Source of the DNA: Monocercomonoides exilis PA203
Taxonomy: Eukaryota > Protista > Preaxostyla
Reading direction: 5' to 3'
Assembly: GCA_001643675.2 (NCBI GenBank)
Contig: LSRY02000022.1
Span: 1,054,001 to 1,118,000, forward strand
DNA: 64,000 nt
In this document: piece by piece, positions 4,216-58,617 of the stretch
How positions within the stretch are numbered: the stretch's first letter is position 1
Layout: each line of letters begins with the position of its first letter
The notes under the pieces: model-generated
Database searches by the model: none
Told to the model about the DNA's origin: nothing
What the model saw: the letters and a program-made list of their open reading frames with translations, nothing else
Position numbers and translations under genes: made by a program

Positions 4216-4803
4216 TATGTTTCAATTTCGATAAAGAAAATTTCAATTTCCAAACGATTTAAATATTGACTTGCTTTATGAATAATTGGTATATTGTGAT
4301 TCAAACATACATAATTATTTAATGTTTGTTAACTTTTTTCAGAAATTAAAATAAAATGATTATTCAAAAAAGAAAGAAGAGATTTTGAATATTTTATTTA
4401 TTTATTTATTTGACAAAATTTTTTAGAAAAGATCCTTATGTTTTAATTTCTCATTGTATAAAAAATTTTAAACTTTCATCAATTTTCTGTTTCCACTCAC
4501 GAAACTTCATTAAAATGGAAACAAAAGGCATTCTGCAACGAAAAGCACATCAGTTATTTTTCACAATTTTTTCTCTCCAAGAAAAAATTGAAGTTATTTA
4601 AGATAATTATAATCCCTTTGTTATGAAATCTTGAAAAATTTTCAAAAAAACTTGAAATTGAGTAAGAAAATATATAAAACAAAAAATGTTGATCCTATGA
4701 TCACTTTGACTTAAATTTTCAAATATTTAATTCTCGCGAAATAAGGCTTTCCTGAATAAAAAAGAGTATTTTTTCAAAGACATCTAATGTATGCATGAAT
4801 ATA

Positions 4804-5252
4804 CAGTCTGAACCGGATATAATCACATCGGTTTTTGCACAACTTTTTGTGACTATACACGATTGTGATAATATCCGGTTCAACTTTACACACAAAAAAA
4901 CAAAAATTAATAAACCAATAAATAAATATTGGGTCAAATTTTTAATTTTTGAAAATTCTTTTCAAAAACACATTTTTCAATAGAAAAAACAATTTTTTGG
5001 ATTTTATTATGTTATTCAGAAGTATAAAACATAATTTTGAAAAATCAAAAAACAAAGATTTATAATCGAATAGTCGATTTTTCATTGAAAAAATCACCCA
5101 TAACAATAAAAATTGTGATTATATATTTTCAGCCCAGTGATTATATGCGATGGAAAATGAATGAAAAACAATCAAAAAATGTCGGTGCATCGAAAAATGT
5201 GACTAAAGGCGAATGTGATTATATTCGACGCGATTATATCCGGTTTCGACTG
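4804..5252. mobile_element. pogo/Tc1-mariner-type MITE (449 bp)
   Basis: Structure TA|CAGTC...GACTG|TA. The 27-bp TIRs (4804-4830, 5226-5252) match at 23/27. Internal copies of the TIR core occur at 4864-4880 and, degenerate, at 5214-5227. Confidence 0.75.
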
Positions 5253-50306: not shown

Positions 50307-51688
50307 AGAAGGATATTTGAATAAAAAAGAGAGAAAGAATGAAAGTGAAGAAGAAAGAAAGAGAAAGAGAAAGAGAAAGAGAAAGAGAAAGAGAAAGAGA
50401 AAGAGAAAGAGAAAGAGAAACAAAGGAAAAGATAATCTGAGTGAGCAGCTGTTCTTTGCTGTTTTTGGCGGATATGCAGAAATAATGAAATTGCAGTAGA
50501 ATGTTAAACAAATATTATTATATATTATGGCATTATATTTGTTTGTTGGTTTGTTTTCTTTAATTTATCAAAATGTGAATCATCGTAAGAGTCATATAGA
50601 TTTGTGCACTTGACAACACCAGGAAAAATGAATTATTTTATTTTATTTTTTATTTATTTTTTTCAACTCAGTATTAGACGAATAAATTCTTGTGCATGTT
50701 TTTCAATTTTTACTGAATGAATGATAGTCTTATTTGCATTGTTTCAATGATAGACTTGCTTGTTTATTCAGAATAGTTTTTTATATATTCGCGTTTTATT
50801 TTAAATAATACATCCTATTTTCCAAATCTTTTTTGATTAGTATTCAAGATTGATTTTTCTTTAATAATATTATACAATTAATTTCTCTGTATTTTTTCCT
50901 AATTTGCAACACTTTTTATTATTTTGAAATTGAATGCAATTTTATGAAGTTGTTTGTTCCTTCTTTTTTTCATTTTGTTTTTGTTTCTCTCATTTTCAAA
51001 TATTGCATGTTTATCACATTGATTCAAATAACAATTATTGCACAAATAGAGTGAGAATAGCTTGAATTTTCGGAATGTTTGGTGCGAGCAAGTTAAATTT
51101 TATTTGATTTTTCAGACATCTTTAAACATTCTGATGTGAAACAATGCAGGATTTGAAAATGTGCTGATTTAGACAATTCTGTGAAATTAATACACATTTC
51201 TTCTTAATGTGACGCCTTGCTTTTCTAATGAGAAAAAAAGACAAGTTTTGCACTCATAATAAAGTCCACAAAGATGGTTGTTCCTTTTTGTGGATAATTC
51301 AAGTTTGAAAATGAAACCACCAGAGCACATGTTGGAAGTTTGGTGTTGTTATTGTGCTTTGCATCTGGCAATTTGATTTGCACAATGGATGTGATTTCAA
51401 CTTCCATTTTCCTCGTTTCAACAAATTTGTTTGTTGCAGCAAAACTGATGGATGCAGTTCGAGCCAATGCCAGACGAACTGGAAAGCATGTCAGATGTTT
51501 CAGTAAGACATTTCATCATTTTGTTGTTGTTTTGTTTTTTCAGAAAAGTTTGATGAGATTAAGCGATCTGAAGAAAATGTCCAAATTCAAAGCATTGAAG
51601 AGTTTTTTGCTCTTCTTGAGCATGGCGATGATAAAACGGTGAAATCCGCAATATCTTATATGGTTTTTATTAGGAAAGAAAATCGAAT

Positions 51689-51726
51689 ATCAATTCCTTC
51701 TCTTATAATTGAGAACCACGATCTAT
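51689..51726. repeat. DIRS inverted terminal repeat (element 3' end)
   Basis: ATCAATTCCTTCTCTTATAATTGAGAACCACGATCTAT, the perfect 38-bp reverse complement of 56259-56296. Confidence 0.95.
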
Positions 51727-51953
51727 GGGTAGTCGCCCGTGAGGATCAAGGTTGTGAAATGGTGGAAAATTCTGAAATGCAATCGACAATTTCACAACAA
51801 CTTAACCATAAACCAACAATTGGATAAAAAACGAGCTAACCAACTGAACAAGCGTTATCACATACTTTATTAACGCTTAGAAAAGGAATAAACAAGAACA
51901 CCATAACTCGAAACACTTGTTTACATTGGTGGGAGTGAAACGGTGGTGGGCCA

Positions 51954-52056
51954 AAGAGAAGGAATTGATATTCGATTTTCTTTCCTAATAAAAGTGCATA
52001 AGCACCTTTATTGTCAAGAAAATCTTCAATCAATTCCTTCTCTTATAATTGAGAAC
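51954..52056. repeat. DIRS internal complementary region (ICR)
   Basis: 103 bp that are the exact reverse complement of 56269-56338 joined to 51672-51704. It lies just past the YR stop codon. Confidence 0.96.
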
Positions 52057-52061
52057 ACAAG

Positions 52062-55000
52062 TTAATTGGGAGATGATGAGACCATCATCAGAACAGCTTT
52101 CGTGATCGTCCTTTGCTTTTCCTCTGATTCCTTCCTTATTTGGGCCCTTGTTCTGATTATGAACTCTTTTACCTGTTCTGGCGGATCTCCTTTTCCTTCA
52201 CTGGGCTCTTCAATCCTTGTAGGCCTCATTGGCTGTTCTTCCCCACTTCTTTGTTCTGCATTCTCTCGTTGACAAATAAAGCTATTGGCTTGTGGTTTAG
52301 TTGTTTTCTCATTTCCGCCTCTCTTCTTTGCTTCGGATCTTCTGTACATGGCTGTGCTGTCTGCATCCTCTCTGTTCGCTCTATCTTCTTGATCGTTTGT
52401 TGCAGAGGCAATAACGCGGGCCATTGATGATGCTAGGTTTGATCGAAAATAATGTTTGACCAACGTGTTTGTTCGTGGTGACAATCTTGCAAACCTTGCC
52501 ACTTGTTCTGGGGGAATTCCTGCCATCGTCAGTGTTGAAAGGCTTGCTGCTTTGATCGAGTATGGTGTGAATCTCTTGGGCACTCCTGCATCATAAATCG
52601 CTTCCTTTGCGAGCTTCCGAATTCCTTCTACAGCTAACGGATGAAAGTTCTCTGTGTTAAGAAGCAATTTGTCTGTGTGACTGTTTTTCTCTTGGACTTT
52701 TTTCCACAATTCCTGGATCGCTGATGCGGGACAAATCAAACTCAGTTCTGGTAAGAACGGAACAGCAATCTCCGTGCGTGTGTTTGAGGTCTTCAACTTT
52801 GTGTCCAAATACACGCCTTCCTCCTCAAACCTGCTTTCCAACATATTGATCCTCTCGAGCTCCGTGAATCTACAAGCTGAAAACAACATCGTTAGAACAA
52901 TCACTTTCATAGTGAGCTGTTTAAAGCTTAACCCTTCATTTGGTCCCAGGCCAGAAAAGAAATTAAGCACTATTCGAGGATTCCAAATGTCTCCTGTCTT
53001 CTTCTTTCTTGACTTGTCCGTCCTTCGGAACGATCTAAAAAGGGTACGAATAATAGGGATGTCTCCAAGGAAGGAAGAGAATACAATATTGGAGTAAAGC
53101 GATACTGCTGCCCTTGTCAATTGAAGGCAAGTTAACTTCATGCCACCGTTCCTAAGCGATAGAAACACATTTGCACAACATGCGGCCCACTCTTGAATAG
53201 ACTCCGGTATTCTTCCATGTCCACACTCTCTCCATTGTTTTCCAAAATGAGCAAATCCATACAGATACACTCGCCATGTGCTCTTGGATATGCCTGCTCT
53301 GCACTCTTCTGCTAACGAGAAAGGGATTGATTTTTGTTCCAATGCATTCTTCCACCATTGTTCCCCATCGCGTAAGGTGCATTCAGCCAGATTATCCTCA
53401 ATCGACCTGGTGGAAGACTCGCACCTGTCCATTGCATCGATGGACCCTTCCGCAGAACCTCCTTCTGATTCTTCCAAGTCCATTCCAAATGGGGAATGGA
53501 CCTTAACAAGCTCTCCCAATTCTGTCCCTTCCAATTCGGCAGGAGTAATATCACTTGTGCTCTCTCCTGTCGTGCTTTCTGGATCGTCGGAATCACAAGC
53601 GGGATCGGTGGATGAGCTAACACGACTTCGTTCTTCCAGGGAAACATCAGTCCGTCTTCTGCAAGCTGACTTCCTATTCCGCACCATCTTCCCACTTTGC
53701 GATTGTGTTGCGCTGCAAACGCGTCCAGCGTTGGAGCAATGTTTAGTTTCGTCATTATCTTTTCCCATTCTTCGTCCTGCACCTCGTAGTCTCCTGCTCT
53801 CTCCAGTCGTGATAACGCATCTGCTCTTGTGTTCAGTACACCTGGAACATGTGACGCTCTCAACTCTATGCCTAGATCTTGTTTTAGTCTCCATAATTTC
53901 CTCAGCACTGGTCGAAGCTTCTTCCCTGCATTCCATCTGTTTATGTTGAACACCACGGATGTATTGTCCGATCTTAGGTGAAGAAAGGACACGTGATGTT
54001 CCTGAAGGATTGGTGAGAAGTGGCTCAGAGCAAGAAATACTGCCATTAGTTCCCTGAAATTGGATGATTGCTTTCTCACTCTGTGGGGGAACGGATTGTG
54101 CGCATCGAGGAGCTGGTTGTTCAAGAGGAGCGAAGCTCCCCAAGCCGTCTCCGATGCATCTGTTGTAAGAGTTGCATCCGGGGAAAATACTGGGATAAGT
54201 CTGCGACTTGGGTGTGCTCTCAACTTCGATATCCATTGCCGAATCTGTTGCAGGATTGACGCATTCAACCTCAATTTGCCTTTCCATCCTCTTTCCTTTA
54301 TTCCTTTCTGGAGCATACGATGCATGGAGTGAAGCCATAGAGAAGCGTCTGGCTGAACAAACCGAACAGCATTGAGTTTTCCAATAAAGGAAGCCAGATC
54401 TTTCACTTTCACAATTCTTGCTTTTACACAATCCTTTTCCCATCTGCGACACAAGCGAGTCAGTGCTTCTTTTCTGTCTCTTGCAAGCCGAACCTTCATC
54501 TTCGACGAGTCCCACTCGAAGCCAAGGAAAGAAAACCTTCTTCTTGGTGTCAACTGGCTTTTCTCCTGGTTCACCAAAAGACCTAATTCCTCCAGAAACC
54601 TGATAATCTCTTTGGCGGCCTGTGCTAAGAATTCCTTGTTCTCGTGTAATATAAGGAAATCGTCCAAATATGCGATTACCCGAACATCCCATCGTTTCCT
54701 GATTTCTGAAGTCACCTTCCTCATCGCGTGCGTGAAAACTCTTGGGGCGTCTACGAAACCAAACGGCATTCCTCTGAATGTGTAGTCTTTTCCAGAAAAT
54801 CTGAAAGCCAAATATGGTCTTAGGTCTTTGGAAACCGGAAGCAGATAGTAGGCCTGTTGCAAATCCACTGAGACTGCGTAATCTTTTCTTCTCAGCACAC
54901 GCTCTACTGTCTTTTCGTTGTCGCATTTGAAGTGCGTCTTTATCAAGGCAGCGTTCAATCTCCGGCAATCCAGTATCTGCCTCCATGCTCCCGATTTCTT

Positions 55001-55367
55001 TCTGATCAAAAACACGTTGTTCCTGTGCCTCACCTCCTCTGACCTTATCTCCTCCACAATTCCTGTCTCTATCTGTTCCTGCAGAAGATCTGCGAACACC
55101 TTTCTTTGATCTTCGTTTGAGTGAACGGCTCCATCTCTGAACGGCATATCCCTTAGCTTCATTCTCATATGTTTGCTTTTCCACATCGCCTGCACGCCCT
55201 GTTTTATCAACTTGGCACCACCAATTCTTTCCCAAGCCTCTATGAAAAACTCCGTTCTTCCTCCAATCCTTGTCCTGCCCATGACTCCTTTCCTCGCTCC
55301 ATCTCCCCTCTCTATTGTTGACCCCGACTTCGGCTGTAGTATCTCCAGTTCGTTGTGGTCCATCCAT
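52062..55367 (-). CDS. DIRS ORF3: tyrosine recombinase (C-terminal domain ~52440-53370) on a long leader overlapping the RT ORF
   Basis: STWRVY, IWNPRIVL, LTMKVIVLTMLFSACRFTEL (catalytic R), TKLKT (K), ICPASAI, FTPYSIKAAS and TLVKHY (Y). Confidence 0.92.
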   Translation of the reverse strand: MDGPQRTGDTTAEVGVNNREGRWSEERSHGQDKDWRKNGVFHRGLGKNWWCQVDKTGRAGDVEKQTYENEAKGYAVQRWSRSLKRRSKKGVRRSSAGTDRDRNCGGDKVRGGEAQEQRVFDQKEIGSMEADTGLPEIERCLDKDALQMRQRKDSRACAEKKRLRSLSGFATGLLSASGFQRPKTIFGFQIFWKRLHIQRNAVWFRRRPKSFHARDEEGDFRNQETMGCSGNRIFGRFPYITREQGILSTGRQRDYQVSGGIRSFGEPGEKPVDTKKKVFFPWLRVGLVEDEGSACKRQKRSTDSLVSQMGKGLCKSKNCESERSGFLYWKTQCCSVCSARRFSMASLHASYAPERNKGKRMERQIEVECVNPATDSAMDIEVESTPKSQTYPSIFPGCNSYNRCIGDGLGSFAPLEQPAPRCAQSVPPQSEKAIIQFQGTNGSISCSEPLLTNPSGTSRVLSSPKIGQYIRGVQHKQMECREEASTSAEEIMETKTRSRHRVESVTCSRCTEHKSRCVITTGESRRLRGAGRRMGKDNDETKHCSNAGRVCSATQSQSGKMVRNRKSACRRRTDVSLEERSRVSSSTDPACDSDDPESTTGESTSDITPAELEGTELGELVKVHSPFGMDLEESEGGSAEGSIDAMDRCESSTRSIEDNLAECTLRDGEQWWKNALEQKSIPFSLAEECRAGISKSTWRVYLYGFAHFGKQWRECGHGRIPESIQEWAACCANVFLSLRNGGMKLTCLQLTRAAVSLYSNIVFSSFLGDIPIIRTLFRSFRRTDKSRKKKTGDIWNPRIVLNFFSGLGPNEGLSFKQLTMKVIVLTMLFSACRFTELERINMLESRFEEEGVYLDTKLKTSNTRTEIAVPFLPELSLICPASAIQELWKKVQEKNSHTDKLLLNTENFHPLAVEGIRKLAKEAIYDAGVPKRFTPYSIKAASLSTLTMAGIPPEQVARFARLSPRTNTLVKHYFRSNLASSMARVIASATNDQEDRANREDADSTAMYRRSEAKKRGGNEKTTKPQANSFICQRENAEQRSGEEQPMRPTRIEEPSEGKGDPPEQVKEFIIRTRAQIRKESEEKQRTITKAVLMMVSSSPN
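53312..55363 (-). CDS. DIRS ORF2: reverse transcriptase - RNase H - adenine methyltransferase-like domain, 683 aa
   Basis: RT: WRQILDCRRLN, VDLQQAY, MPFG, AYLDD, FLG. RNase H: LTTDASETAWGA, SNFREL, RSDNTSV, HVPGVLNTRADALSR. MT-like: LDAFA, DGLMFPW, AHPPIP, LLLPNW. Confidence 0.96.
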   Translation of the reverse strand: MDHNELEILQPKSGSTIERGDGARKGVMGRTRIGGRTEFFIEAWERIGGAKLIKQGVQAMWKSKHMRMKLRDMPFRDGAVHSNEDQRKVFADLLQEQIETGIVEEIRSEEVRHRNNVFLIRKKSGAWRQILDCRRLNAALIKTHFKCDNEKTVERVLRRKDYAVSVDLQQAYYLLPVSKDLRPYLAFRFSGKDYTFRGMPFGFVDAPRVFTHAMRKVTSEIRKRWDVRVIAYLDDFLILHENKEFLAQAAKEIIRFLEELGLLVNQEKSQLTPRRRFSFLGFEWDSSKMKVRLARDRKEALTRLCRRWEKDCVKARIVKVKDLASFIGKLNAVRFVQPDASLWLHSMHRMLQKGIKERGWKGKLRLNASILQQIRQWISKLRAHPSRRLIPVFSPDATLTTDASETAWGASLLLNNQLLDAHNPFPHRVRKQSSNFRELMAVFLALSHFSPILQEHHVSFLHLRSDNTSVVFNINRWNAGKKLRPVLRKLWRLKQDLGIELRASHVPGVLNTRADALSRLERAGDYEVQDEEWEKIMTKLNIAPTLDAFAAQHNRKVGRWCGIGSQLAEDGLMFPWKNEVVLAHPPIPLVIPTIQKARQERAQVILLLPNWKGQNWESLLRSIPHLEWTWKNQKEVLRKGPSMQWTGASLPPGRLRIIWLNAPYAMGNNGGRMHWNKNQSLSR

Positions 55368-56247
55368 CTCTCTGCCGCTTTCCTTCTCGTGTTGCCTGTG
55401 AGCGGGGTCCTCTCCGAAAAAACTGTGAGCCCCAGATCTTTCTTGGGCCAGTGTAATTTCTTCTTGGAAGCCCCTGTGTTGCAGAGCTCCTCTCTCCTTT
55501 AGACCATAAGGAACTTGTTGACTTTCTGCTCGTTACTTTAACGGGGGTTGAGGAGCTTGTCGCTAATCTTGTCTCCTTTAAAATCTGCTCCTGGCGTTCG
55601 GTTAATAATCCCGTCACATTTTCTGATTTCATTTGCTCCGCCATCCGAAAACCAAATCTTCCTTGCAGCCTGGTTGTTCTCGCCTCCTGCAATGCCTTCG
55701 CTATAAGCAGTAACGCGTCAGCTCCCCTTTGTGCACTTTCCCGATGAGGGTCTGAGTCAGCCAAGCTCAGAAGCTGAGCCTTGAAAGCCTGATACAAACA
55801 CAGCTCTATTCTATAACCCGCGGAATCCAACGCATCATTAAACCAATTGGCCGATTTTTGGAAGGGGGGAGGCGCTGGCTGCAATACTGGGCTTAGATCC
55901 TGAAGCGCGTATTCTTGTTCAATACTTTCTATTGAAAAGGCAGGAAGTTGAAGATCAAAAATGGATCTATTTGGTTCCTGACCGAAAATGCTATTAAAAA
56001 CGTCAGCAGCCCTTTCGTGCAAGTCTGAGTCTGTTTCTTCTTCTGTGCTCTTTTCTTCGGTTGCTCTTGCCTCTGTTTCCGGAGGACTTGATTGAGAAGA
56101 TACCGACGCAGAAGAAGGAATTGGTGGAAGGAGCGTTTGGACCCCAAGCTGGCTTTGCACCCCACCTGGCAGTGAGGCTGCTTCGGTTGCCGGTGTAAGT
56201 CCAGTTGTCTGCGGGAAAAATGGTGATTGCATCATGAATTCGATCAT
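55312..56247 (-). CDS. DIRS ORF1, gag-like (about 311 aa from the first ATG inside the element)
   Basis: First ORF after the 5' ITR, overlapping the starts of ORF2 and ORF3. The call is positional, with no diagnostic motif. The ORF-track extension to 56583 runs into host DNA. Confidence 0.75.
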   Translation of the reverse strand: MIEFMMQSPFFPQTTGLTPATEAASLPGGVQSQLGVQTLLPPIPSSASVSSQSSPPETEARATEEKSTEEETDSDLHERAADVFNSIFGQEPNRSIFDLQLPAFSIESIEQEYALQDLSPVLQPAPPPFQKSANWFNDALDSAGYRIELCLYQAFKAQLLSLADSDPHRESAQRGADALLLIAKALQEARTTRLQGRFGFRMAEQMKSENVTGLLTERQEQILKETRLATSSSTPVKVTSRKSTSSLWSKGERSSATQGLPRRNYTGPRKIWGSQFFRRGPRSQATREGKRQRDGWTTTNWRYYSRSRGQQ

Positions 56248-56258
56248 GGTGACTTCGA

Positions 56259-56296
56259 ATAGATCGTGGTTCTCAATTATAAGAGAAGGAATTGAT
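56259..56296. repeat. DIRS inverted terminal repeat (element 5' end)
   Basis: Perfect 38-bp reverse complement of 51689-51726. Confidence 0.95.
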
Positions 56297-58617
56297 TGAA
56301 GATTTTCTTGACAATAAAGGTGCTTATGCACTTTTATTGAAATCAACGATGCAATTGAAAACGGGCACTTGTGTTTGGAGAATTCGATTTTATTGCTCAA
56401 GCGGATTGGCTTTTGCAAATTACTCAACTGCATGTGGATTTTTGAATACGACGAATGCACTTTGCACAAAAGATTCGAAAAGTTGGTGCTGGAAGAAGAA
56501 AACAAGAAAGGGGAAAAGAACGAAAAGCTGATGATCGACCTTTGTGAATGCTTTCTTGCTTTGTTTGAAGGAATTCCAGACACATCAAAGGATGCAGTTG
56601 CTATTAGTGTCCGTTGTGTGATGAAGGCTGCAATGAGTAAAGAGGAGGATGAGAAAACTCAAAAAGAAGTGGAAATGGCCTTGCTTGCTTTGAGCAATGC
56701 AAAATATTTTGATGTGTGAAAGTTTGTTCATTGATTCAATAATTCGTTTGTTGGTTTGTTGTCTTTTGAATAGTGTGACAACAGGGTTCAATTCCTTGAT
56801 GAAAGTGCTGAAATCATCAAATATCACCAGGAGCATCACAACCTCACCAGACTTGCGTATCAATCTGCTTGGTGTTCCATTGTTAGTCAGGCAAGCAATG
56901 ACGAGAAAATGGGGAAAACGGTTGAAAATGAACTGAATTTTTGCAAAGAGGCAGAAAGAGAATTGGATGAGCTGTTGAGGTGTGTGAATTGGAGGAAAAA
57001 TGAAAAGGAGATAGATGAAAATTTTGAGGTTCGCCTGATGAAAAGATGGCTTCGAATAATCAACGCATATTTCTTCAAAAACACTTTGAGAGGAGATGAG
57101 GTTTTGAGGCTGATTGCATGTGTTGTGAGACTTTGTCAAACTGTTAAGAATTCAAGCAAAACAGCCTTTGGGAGTGGAATGTTCATTTTCCAAAAGATAA
57201 TCAGAAGTTGCTTGGGGAACTTTGATTATTTGCTGAGAGGCGGAGCAATGGATTATCTTTTTCAGGAGCTGAGCCAACCGACATTCAGATGTGACACTTT
57301 TGGAGAGTGCATGCAGTTCTTTTCGGATCTGTCAATTGCGTTGCACGGAGAAAAAGTCAACACGAATGTTGAAGATGATGAAAGTGAACATTTGGATGAG
57401 TTTGAATGGGAAGGCGAAGGTGGTCAAGATGATGAATGTGATGAATACGATGATTGCGATGAAAATGGCAAAGAAATTGACAATGACGAAGTGATAAAGG
57501 CCGATGAAACTGAAAAACCCAATGGCACTGATGAGGCAAAGCAAATGTTGATAGAAAGAGTTATTCTGAATAAGTTTGAGGAAAAAGGGTTTGAAGATAT
57601 TATCTTTATCTTCGAAACTTATCTTCCATGGTTAAAGTGTTATTCATTTGCATCAGGCGATGCAAGTGATTATTTCATTAGAAACTGAATCAGGAGATTC
57701 TGTTTGTGGATAGTGATTTTTTGTTTGTGTCTCATGAGAAGAGCATTCACGTTATCTGTACAGATGAGTTTGAATCTGAGTTTATTGTTTCATTCATTTA
57801 CATTGTTGATGCATTTTCTTCTTTTGTTTTCCTCTTTTATAATCTGATAATTGTTGATTTCAAGTTGTGTATGTTAAATTATGAAACTCTCTTGAAAGGA
57901 TTGAATTTCATGTTTTCAAACAAGCAGTTCACAAAATGAGAGAATAGGAAATTCATTTTTTTTTTTAATTTCAACATTGAACAATTATTTTTGTATTACA
58001 GCTTTCTTTTGGCTTTTATTCACAAAGTTTGTAGAAAATCTGAAAAATAAATGACTGCTCTATTCTTAAAAAAGAAATCAAAAAATTGAACGAAAAAAGA
58101 TTTGATTGTTTGGCAACACAATGAGTTCATTTGAAAAATGAAGATAATTCTGTGTGGACGATATTTGCACACAACGAATATCTTTCCTTACACAAAAAAT
58201 AATGATTGGGAAGAATTAATCAAAAAGGAAAATGTTATTATTTCAAAAAGATATTCTAATAGTGTAAGAAGAGTTTTATTTTGTCTGATATTTGTGATCT
58301 TTTTGTTGCATCAACGATAATTTCGGAATGAAAACTATCGTGCAGTTTTTTGAGTTATCTTTGTTTATTTTTCATTTTTTTTATATTTCACTCATCGAAA
58401 TTATTGTATCATAAATCGTTTTCATTGATTGAAAGCTGACCGGCAATTTTTTATTGATTTTTTGATAAACAGCTTCAGCATTTCTTTCATGATTGAAAAT
58501 CGTTTTTTATTATTATTCTAATTATTGTAAAGAATTTCTTTAATCAAAAGTTTTTTTCTCATTTTTCAAATAAGCTTGATAAGAAAAATGATATAATTCT
58601 GTTTTTATAATGGAATA

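What the first reader, a model, noticed from the sequence alone, without database searches (positions are those of the whole stretch)
56259..56338. The reconstructed circle junction is a ~135-nt imperfect hairpin with the crossover core in its apical stem
Seen: joining 56259-56338 to 51672-51726 gives a 38-bp ITR stem, a 4x4 loop (TGAA/GAAT), a 9-bp stem (GATTTTCTT 56301-56309 with AAGAAAATC 51676-51684), a 3x4 loop (GAC/AGGA), an 11-bp stem with one G-T (AATAAAGGTGC 56313-56323 with GCACTTTTATT 56328-56338) and a TTAT tip. The core TTTTATT is off-centre, in the 3' arm next to an internal loop. Known: integron IntI (attC) and XerCD on CTX phage recombine folded single-stranded DNA sites with mismatches and bulges. 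Inference: this retroelement may integrate its single-stranded cDNA circle, or a cruciform, through a folded attC-like site rather than a plain duplex circle. I do not know this to be described for DIRS elements.
Basis: partly seen in the sequence, partly recalled or inferred. Interest (0 to 1): 0.85.

Follow-up and report, generated by a model that had tools for sequence, protein, structure and literature searches.

The report
DIRS retrotransposon circle-junction hairpin
The hairpin is real and is kept by natural selection, but it is the folded view of the known end architecture of a DIRS-type retrotransposon (here in the protist Monocercomonoides exilis), and sequence alone cannot show that the element integrates as folded single-stranded DNA.

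Summary
Observation confirmed. Joining 56259-56338 to 51672-51726 folds exactly as described (DNA dG -53.9 kcal/mol). The junction is validated by the element itself: its internal complementary region (ICR, 51954-52056) is the exact reverse complement over 103 nt. The element (51672-56338, minus strand) is a DIRS1-like retrotransposon of Monocercomonoides exilis, with RT/RNase H, a weak Dam-like match, a tyrosine recombinase, ITRs and an ICR.

The hairpin equals the known ITR, "divergent ITR" and terminal extension. It is under selection. Four stem pairs carry compensatory double changes across sister families (0/500 shuffles), and variation sits in the loops (p=0.0005). Five of six unrelated DIRS1-like junctions are also significantly structured.

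One correction: the "7-bp core" is not a core. In 20 insertions only TT is invariant, preceded by a T-rich preference. This is the family's known NTT junction.

The attC-like single-strand mechanism remains untested. For it: a single crossover point with 2-nt identity, and no duplex circle ever seen for DIRS-1. Against it: both strands fold equally, the module is inverted relative to the coding strand in other DIRS elements, and the classical cDNA end-joining model also needs these pairings. The scan had already noted this element (s1-468488).

The parts
51665..51671 (+). Target-derived T-rich 7-mer on the left flank. Only 51670-51671 (TT) is shared by all insertions.
   Evidence: TT in 20/20 left flanks, A or T at -3 in 18/20, T in 12-15/20 at -4 to -7. 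The full 7-mer is present in only 2/20.
51672..51737 (+). Left terminus in the window, which is the 3' terminus of the element: 4 unpaired nt, the 3' arm of the 9-bp stem (51676-51684), a loop (51685-51688) and the ITR arm (51689-51726, weaker to 51737).
   Evidence: (I2, I3).
51954..52056 (+). Internal complementary region (ICR): the exact reverse complement of the end-to-end junction (70 nt of the right end plus 33 nt of the left end). It is itself the same imperfect hairpin.
   Evidence: (I1, I3, I4). There are 34 copies in the genome across families.
52062..53399 (-). Tyrosine recombinase ORF, which overlaps the end of the RT ORF.
   Evidence: Phage_integrase E = 1.8e-5 (25.1 bits, below the 27.1-bit curated cut-off); 22 M. 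exilis homologues.
53312..55363 (-). RT / RNase H / methyltransferase-like ORF.
   Evidence: RVT_1 E = 1.4e-29, RT_RNaseH_2 2.8e-5, Dam 0.059 (weak).
55312..56247 (-). ORF1 in the gag position, with no family match.
56248..56309 (+). Right ITR arm in the window, which is the 5' terminus of the element. It includes the 5' arm of the 9-bp stem (56301-56309).
   Evidence: (I2).
56310..56338 (+). 29-nt terminal extension beyond the ITR. 56313-56338 is a complete 11-bp hairpin whose last base is the last base of the element, so the crossover lies at its 3' base.
   Evidence: One compensatory A:T to T:A change is fixed in family D (15 copies).

Best explanation
Shown: this is a full-length DIRS1-like tyrosine-recombinase retrotransposon of Monocercomonoides exilis. 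The 135-nt hairpin is the folded view of the family's known terminal design. The ITR forms the outer stem. The ICR-specified 'divergent ITR' forms the 4x4 loop and the 9-bp stem. A terminal extension forms the apical hairpin. The same sequence is kept internally as the ICR. Base pairing in the two inner stems is maintained by selection. Insertions join at one fixed point, after TT, at the 3' base of the apical hairpin.

Inferred (about 50%): the palindrome works while the element is single-stranded. The cDNA ends pair with each other and with the ICR. This sets the 3'-OH of the extension next to the 5' end of the other terminus so they can be joined into a circle. The apical hairpin stays folded and marks that nick. 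The recombinase then exchanges strands at TT beside a T-rich arm. Whether it does so on the folded or ICR-paired single strand (about 25%), or only after conversion to a duplex circle, is not decided by the sequence.
For: The ICR is the exact complement of the junction. Domains are and the host organism. Covariation: 36 pairs are 97.2% paired. Four pairs have changes on both sides (three in the 9-bp stem, one in the apical stem). 0/500 shuffles reach this, and slid controls give none in five of six offsets and one at +3. The variant is carried by a family with at least 15-19 copies. Variable columns are 13/72 paired against 12/20 unpaired, p = 0.0005. Termini and ICR are 84-88% identical between families whose coding DNA is 65-68% identical. 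In five other DIRS1-like elements from unrelated samples the junction also folds into tiered hairpins. The part inside the perfect ITR stem has z of -4 to -7 in four of them. In the sense-strand fold of the 3' UTR the apical hairpin persists, and the ICR's right part forms a 33-bp duplex with the element's 3' end. The 3'-OH abuts the hairpin base. In DIRS-1 the ICR is essential, the cDNA is single-stranded and competent for integration, and no junction PCR product or duplex circle was obtained (PMC7192593).
Against: No experiment exists on this element. A precise role for the apical hairpin in end-joining is my inference, because the classical model does not require it. Covariation of a palindrome is equally expected if both half-sites bind one protein in duplex DNA. 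The junction-ICR duplex (103 bp, perfect) is much more stable than the hairpin, so the hairpin may be transient. Only four independent compensatory events, in three lineages of one genome, support the stems.
Confidence: 0.5

Rival explanations
1. The single-stranded cDNA circle, or a cruciform, presents the crossover in a duplex-like stem. The recombinase bound to the T-rich arm makes one strand exchange at TT with the chromosomal duplex. Replication then resolves the product, as for integron attC or CTX phage.
For: There is one fixed crossover point. All 20 left junctions carry target-type 7-mers. Of 15 right junctions, 11 carry the A-C core TTTTATT and one the family D core, and none shows the 4 nt that a second staggered exchange would transfer. 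Only 2 nt of identity are needed, far less than the 6-8 bp overlap usual for tyrosine recombinases (established knowledge). In this element the strand ending in TT has the polarity of first-strand cDNA. The apical stem makes the T-rich arm double-stranded within a single strand. The stems covary. For DIRS-1 only single-stranded cDNA has been seen.
Against: Both strands fold almost equally, with G-T pairs 2 versus 1 among about 230 pairs in six elements. So there is no sign of strand selection like the extrahelical bases of attC. In L053, L054, L055 and L058 the extension is at the other end, so the NTT-ending strand is the sense strand, not the cDNA strand. The ICR can sequester the junction in a perfect duplex. 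A single exchange could equally occur on a duplex circle.
Confidence: 0.25
2. The standard model. A double-stranded circle is the substrate, and the palindrome reflects symmetric protein-binding sites on the two abutting ends (recombinase or accessory protein). No folded form plays a role.
For: This is the published model (Cappello 1985, as summarised in PMC7192593 and PMC3266345). Stems are almost purely Watson-Crick on both strands. The module works in either orientation relative to the coding strand. An imperfect inverted repeat of the T-rich arm flanks the 4 unpaired nt in the duplex as well.
Against: The dyad of the palindrome is 12-13 nt from the crossover, unlike known core sites where the exchange is centred. 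Both arms of the apical stem lie in one terminus. There is no homology in any 6-8 bp overlap. A duplex circle has never been observed for DIRS-1.
Confidence: 0.2
3. The selected structure is the ICR hairpin in the sense RNA (3' UTR). It could act as a primer or processing signal, for example a U-rich box plus polypurine tract for plus-strand priming, or as an RNA-stability element.
For: The G-T pair is a G-U on the ICR sense strand. An 11-12 nt all-purine run follows the crossover in all four families, and its variable positions change only between purines. RNA-library contigs cover this 3' region. An earlier scan note reads a preserved 3' UTR hairpin of these elements as ENE-like (s1-468352).
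Against: No Rfam family matches at E <= 1. In the RNA fold the ICR's right part prefers the 3' end over the 9-bp stem. DIRS-1 lacking the ICR still makes cDNA. The stems lack the G-U richness usual for RNA structures.
Confidence: 0.15
4. By-product: the pairing is only the consequence of inverted repeats being copied from one another and from the ICR, with no function of its own.
For: The 38-bp outer stem can be renewed each cycle by copying one terminus from the other (classical model).
Against: The 4x4 and 3x4 mismatches persist in all copies and are written in the ICR, so the inner region is not homogenised by end-to-end copying. Compensatory changes there need two separate mutations. The apical hairpin lies within one end only.
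Confidence: 0.05

Closest known systems
DIRS1-like terminal architecture: ITRs, two overlapping ICRs, 3-bp 'circular junction', terminal extensions (Cappello 1985; Goodwin and Poulter; Piednoel et al. 2011, PMC3266345)
   Same: ITRs are present. The ICR lies just after the recombinase gene and is complementary to both termini. There is a partly complementary 'divergent ITR' written in the ICR. An extension is complementary only to the ICR. There is an NTT (here ATT) junction and no target-site duplication.
   Different: The extension is at the 5' (left) end of the coding strand. Piednoel et al. found this only in fungi and Amoebozoa. The host is an oxymonad, and I found no paper naming DIRS in this organism. 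The extension is shown here to be a covarying hairpin.
Hairpin near the right end of Dictyostelium DIRS-1 (positions 4792-4805) noted by Poulter and Goodwin, and the remark that the circle junction is self-complementary (both in PMC7192593)
   Same: A short hairpin lies within the terminal extension, next to the junction.
   Different: [quoted passage not shown] Here the hairpin is at the opposite end, so that role cannot be general. No covariation analysis was reported there.
Integron attC sites recombined by IntI as folded bottom strands
   Same: It is an imperfect hairpin with internal unpaired spacers. The crossover is near the base of a stem beside a conserved triplet ending in TT. Very little homology with the partner site is needed.
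   Different: attC strand choice depends on extrahelical bases, and only one strand is active. Here both strands fold alike, and single-strand activity is untested. The recombinase is only distantly related (weak Pfam match).
CTX phage attP(+): a forked hairpin of single-stranded phage DNA recombined by XerCD with one strand exchange
   Same: Two inverted arms of a single-stranded circle pair to build a duplex-like site. Integration would be completed by replication.
   Different: In CTX the arms mimic the host dif site. Here the target shows only TT plus a T-rich preference, and the enzyme is element-encoded.

Membership tests
DIRS1-like retrotransposon | Reverse transcriptase and RNase H related to Ty3/gypsy | tested here: met
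   RVT_1 E = 1.4e-29. RNase H-like domains score 2.8e-5 and 0.005, below their curated cut-offs.
DIRS1-like retrotransposon | Dam-like methyltransferase domain after RNase H | tested here: inconclusive
   Pfam Dam E = 0.059, 13.5 bits, at residues 545-618 of the RT ORF.
DIRS1-like retrotransposon | Tyrosine recombinase instead of a DDE integrase | tested here: met
   Phage_integrase E = 1.8e-5, 25.1 bits, just under the 27.1-bit cut-off. There are 22 homologues in the same genome, several carrying PF00589.
DIRS1-like retrotransposon | Inverted terminal repeats plus an internal region complementary to both termini | tested here: met
   The ITR is 62 nt at 87%, including 38 bp perfect. The ICR of 103 nt is 100% complementary to the joined ends.
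DIRS1-like retrotransposon | Short shared junction (NTT) and no target-site duplication | tested here: met
   TT in 20/20 left flanks, the element ends in ATT, and flanks are otherwise unrelated.
attC-like folded single-strand recombination site | Imperfect hairpin with two paired boxes separated by an unpaired spacer, and the crossover beside a conserved triplet | tested here: met
   A 9-bp stem, a 3x4 unpaired spacer, an 11-bp stem, and the crossover after TT at the stem base. This is a resemblance of form only.
attC-like folded single-strand recombination site | Strand selectivity: one strand folds into the active form, marked by extrahelical bases | tested here: not met
   The two strands differ by 2 kcal/mol or less. 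G-T pairs are 2 versus 1 in six elements. The module orientation flips between DIRS lineages.
attC-like folded single-strand recombination site | The recombinase acts on single-stranded folded DNA with one strand exchange | not testable with these tools
   Only indirect evidence: one fixed crossover point and 2-nt identity.

The most novel reading that the evidence does not exclude
DIRS elements insert by a single strand exchange at NTT between their single-stranded cDNA and the chromosome, completed by replication. The attachment site is made double-stranded by self-folding or by pairing with the ICR. This would be the first eukaryotic counterpart of integron-cassette and CTX-phage integration, and would explain why a duplex circle has never been found.
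Probability: 0.22. Interest if true: 0.85.

Novelty: new variant of a known kind. Interest (0 to 1): 0.55.

Why it matters
How DIRS elements integrate is an open question. The model dates from 1985, the duplex circle has never been observed, and the recombinase has never been assayed. This locus supplies a compact system for testing it. It offers several young families in one genome, an exact junction given by the ICR, stems with natural compensatory variants, and target data that argue for one fixed crossover with 2-nt identity. That makes folded single strand versus duplex directly testable with oligonucleotides. It also extends DIRS1-like elements with a left extension to a metamonad.

Tried and rejected
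1. A 7-bp crossover core is rejected. Left-flank 7-mers vary, and the full 7-mer occurs in 2/20.

2. Tandem head-to-tail copies as a source of junction sequence are not supported. The pattern search found 0 in the assembly, while the ICR control found 7.

3. No known RNA family matches; Rfam gave no hit in the element.

4. A poly(A) signal in the 5' arm of the apical stem is not kept in family D.

5. Strand asymmetry as a test of which strand folds gave no signal.

6. Laying Logan contigs produced no listed joints in the DNA runs. One 154-nt contig in an RNA library looks like a junction, but it may be a k-mer chimera through the 40-nt inverted repeat.

I did not try to obtain that DNA another way.

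8. L052 and L056 have ambiguous termini and were not used for crossover positions.

The same counts were then computed from the stored loci.

Full report
**1. Observation**

Folded with DNA parameters, the 135-nt join gives 38 bp, a 4x4 loop, 9 bp, a small internal loop, an 11-bp stem with one G-T and a TTAT tip. The energy is -53.9 kcal/mol, and -52.1 for the complementary strand.

The join itself is validated by the element. The repeat finder shows that 51987-52056 is 100% complementary to 56269-56338, and that 51954-51993 is 100% complementary to 51665-51704 (I1 and I3). The reverse complement of 51954-52056 is found exactly in right end plus left end, with the 7-mer present once. This is an internal complementary region (ICR), the "internal circle junction" of DIRS elements.

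The part of the hairpin that is not a trivial result of the ITRs is significant. The inner 59 nt give z = -7.0 and the 29-nt extension alone gives z = -5.4, with 0 of 500 dinucleotide shuffles as stable.

**2. What the element is**

The coding strand is minus. 53312-55363 carries RVT_1 (E = 1.4e-29), RNase H-like matches and a weak Dam-like match. 52062-53399 carries a Phage_integrase match (E = 1.8e-5). ORF1 has no family. With ITRs and an ICR just after the recombinase gene, this is a DIRS1-like retrotransposon.

The nearest proteins are annotated Monocercomonoides exilis, on contigs whose lengths equal contigs of this assembly. The genome is 82.3 Mb in 101 contigs. I found no paper that names DIRS in this organism.

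**3. Relation to the known architecture**

Piednoel et al. 2011 (PMC3266345) describe four features of DIRS1-like elements:
- ITRs with a perfect part and a "divergent" part constrained by the ICR.
- Terminal extensions of 9-75 bp complementary only to the ICR.
- Two ICRs that overlap on a 3-bp circular junction.
- Termini that are NTT, mostly ATT, in 23 of 28 elements.

The 4x4 loop and 9-bp stem are the divergent ITR. The apical hairpin is the extension. Because an extension sits on one end only, an off-centre crossover next to the apex follows from geometry.

Here the extension is on the 5' end of the coding strand. That paper reports this arrangement only for fungi and Amoebozoa. Malicki et al. 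2020 (PMC7192593) mention a hairpin in the right end of DIRS-1, and note that the circle junction is self-complementary.

**4. Is the pairing selected?**

The genome holds many copies. By blastn they fall into these families:
- Family A: 97-99.5% identical to the window copy.
- A subfamily at 88-90%.
- Families B, C and D: only 65-68% identical in coding DNA, yet 84-88% in the ICR.

Four pairs have changes on both sides, three in the 9-bp stem and one in the apical stem. 0 of 500 shuffles reach this; five of the six slid controls show no such pair and the +3 slide shows one.

The family D variants are carried by 15 copies listed by a pattern search, and by at least 19 ICR matches at 95-100%. 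They therefore belong to a lineage that proliferated.

Variable columns are concentrated in unpaired positions: 12 of 20, against 13 of 72 paired (p = 0.0005). The tip loop varies (TTAT or TAAT), and the G-T pair is invariant.

The mismatched loops persist in all copies and are written in the ICR. The inner region is therefore not homogenised by copying one end from the other, and compensatory changes there required separate mutations.

**5. Generality**

I fetched DIRS1-like elements from unrelated public assemblies through RT homologues and located their ITRs and ICRs. In L053, L054, L055, L056 and L058 the reverse complement of the ICR again folds into a tiered hairpin with an apical hairpin inside the extension. 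The part inside the perfect ITR stem has z of -4.1 to -5.9 in four of them and -1.4 in L054.

In L053-L055 and L058 the extension is at the 3' end of the coding strand. The whole junction module is therefore inverted relative to the genes compared with M. exilis.

**6. The crossover**

Right ends stop after the 7-mer, followed by unrelated flanks. Left flanks were taken from 20 independent insertions:
- TT is present in all 20. The background TT frequency is 0.14.
- Position -3 is A or T in 18.
- Positions -4 to -7 are T in 12-15.
- The full 7-mer occurs in only two, one of which is the window copy.

The shared core is thus the known NTT, with a soft T-rich preference.

Left junctions always keep target-type 7-mers. 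Right junctions almost always keep the element's 7-mer. No right flank begins with the 4 nt that a second, staggered exchange would carry over. The crossover is therefore fixed at one point with 2 nt of identity.

Tyrosine recombinases normally cut 6-8 bp apart and test homology in between (established knowledge). This pattern fits either a very short overlap, as the literature assumes, or a single strand exchange completed by replication.

**7. Evidence bearing on single-stranded versus duplex substrate**

For a single-stranded substrate:
- The pattern in section 6.
- In this element the strand that ends in TT has first-strand cDNA polarity.
- DIRS-1 cDNA is single-stranded, is competent when transformed back, and no junction PCR product or duplex circle was obtained.

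Against a single-stranded substrate:
- The two strands fold almost equally. G-T pairs are 2 versus 1 among about 230 pairs in six elements, so nothing resembles attC strand selection.
- In right-extension elements the NTT-ending strand is the sense strand.
- The ICR can pair with the junction over 103 perfect bp, far more stable than the hairpin.

Folding the sense-strand 3' UTR keeps the apical hairpin. It pairs the ICR's right part with the element's 3' end over 33 bp. The 3'-OH then abuts the hairpin base. This is the geometry expected for ICR-guided completion and joining of ends.

**8. Reads**

Only Logan contigs were available. The DNA runs show no joints.

One RNA-library run has a 154-nt contig that joins 56309-56331 to 51665-51795 without mismatch. 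It runs 91 nt past the ICR-like part. It could be a circle junction or an ICR-templated extension product. It could also be a k-mer chimera through the 40-nt inverted repeat, so I give it little weight. The assembly holds no tandem junction (control).

**9. Verdict**

It is the folded form of a known architecture, in a new host, with the extension on the unusual end.

My best reading, at about 50%, is that it acts in single-stranded replication intermediates during end-joining and presentation of the crossover. The earlier scan note on the 7-bp core (s1-468488) is contradicted by the multi-copy comparison.

Noticed in passing
window 51672-51682, and its copy in the ICR (51976-51986, minus strand): An 11-12 nt all-purine run begins right after the crossover on the ICR sense strand, preceded by a U-rich stretch. 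Across families A-D its variable positions change only between purines. It resembles a polypurine tract for plus-strand priming.
   Followed up: partly
window 56309-56331 joined to 51665-51795 (run X6, record 23): A 154-nt contig in an RNA library joins the right-end extension to the left end and continues 91 nt past the ICR-like part. It could be a circle junction, an ICR-templated extension product, or a de Bruijn chimera.
   Followed up: partly
window 51672-56338 compared with L040-L050: Between DIRS families of this genome the termini and ICR are 84-88% identical, while coding DNA is 65-68% identical. The cis-acting ends evolve much more slowly than the genes.
   Followed up: yes
L034:5712-8808 and L035:2486-6391: These family A copies have internal deletions (about 1.6 kb and 0.8 kb, removing gag and part of RT) but intact ends and ICR. 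They are probably non-autonomous derivatives.
   Followed up: no
window 51672-56338: This is a DIRS1-like element with a left (5') extension in an oxymonad. The 2011 survey reports left extensions only in fungi and Amoebozoa, and I found no paper naming DIRS in Monocercomonoides.
   Followed up: partly
L036:5724 (left end) compared with L036:6001-6103 (ICR): In this 90%-identity copy the left terminus differs from its own ICR at 2 of 33 positions. Either the copy is old, or the 3' terminus is inherited through the RNA rather than rewritten from the ICR.
   Followed up: no
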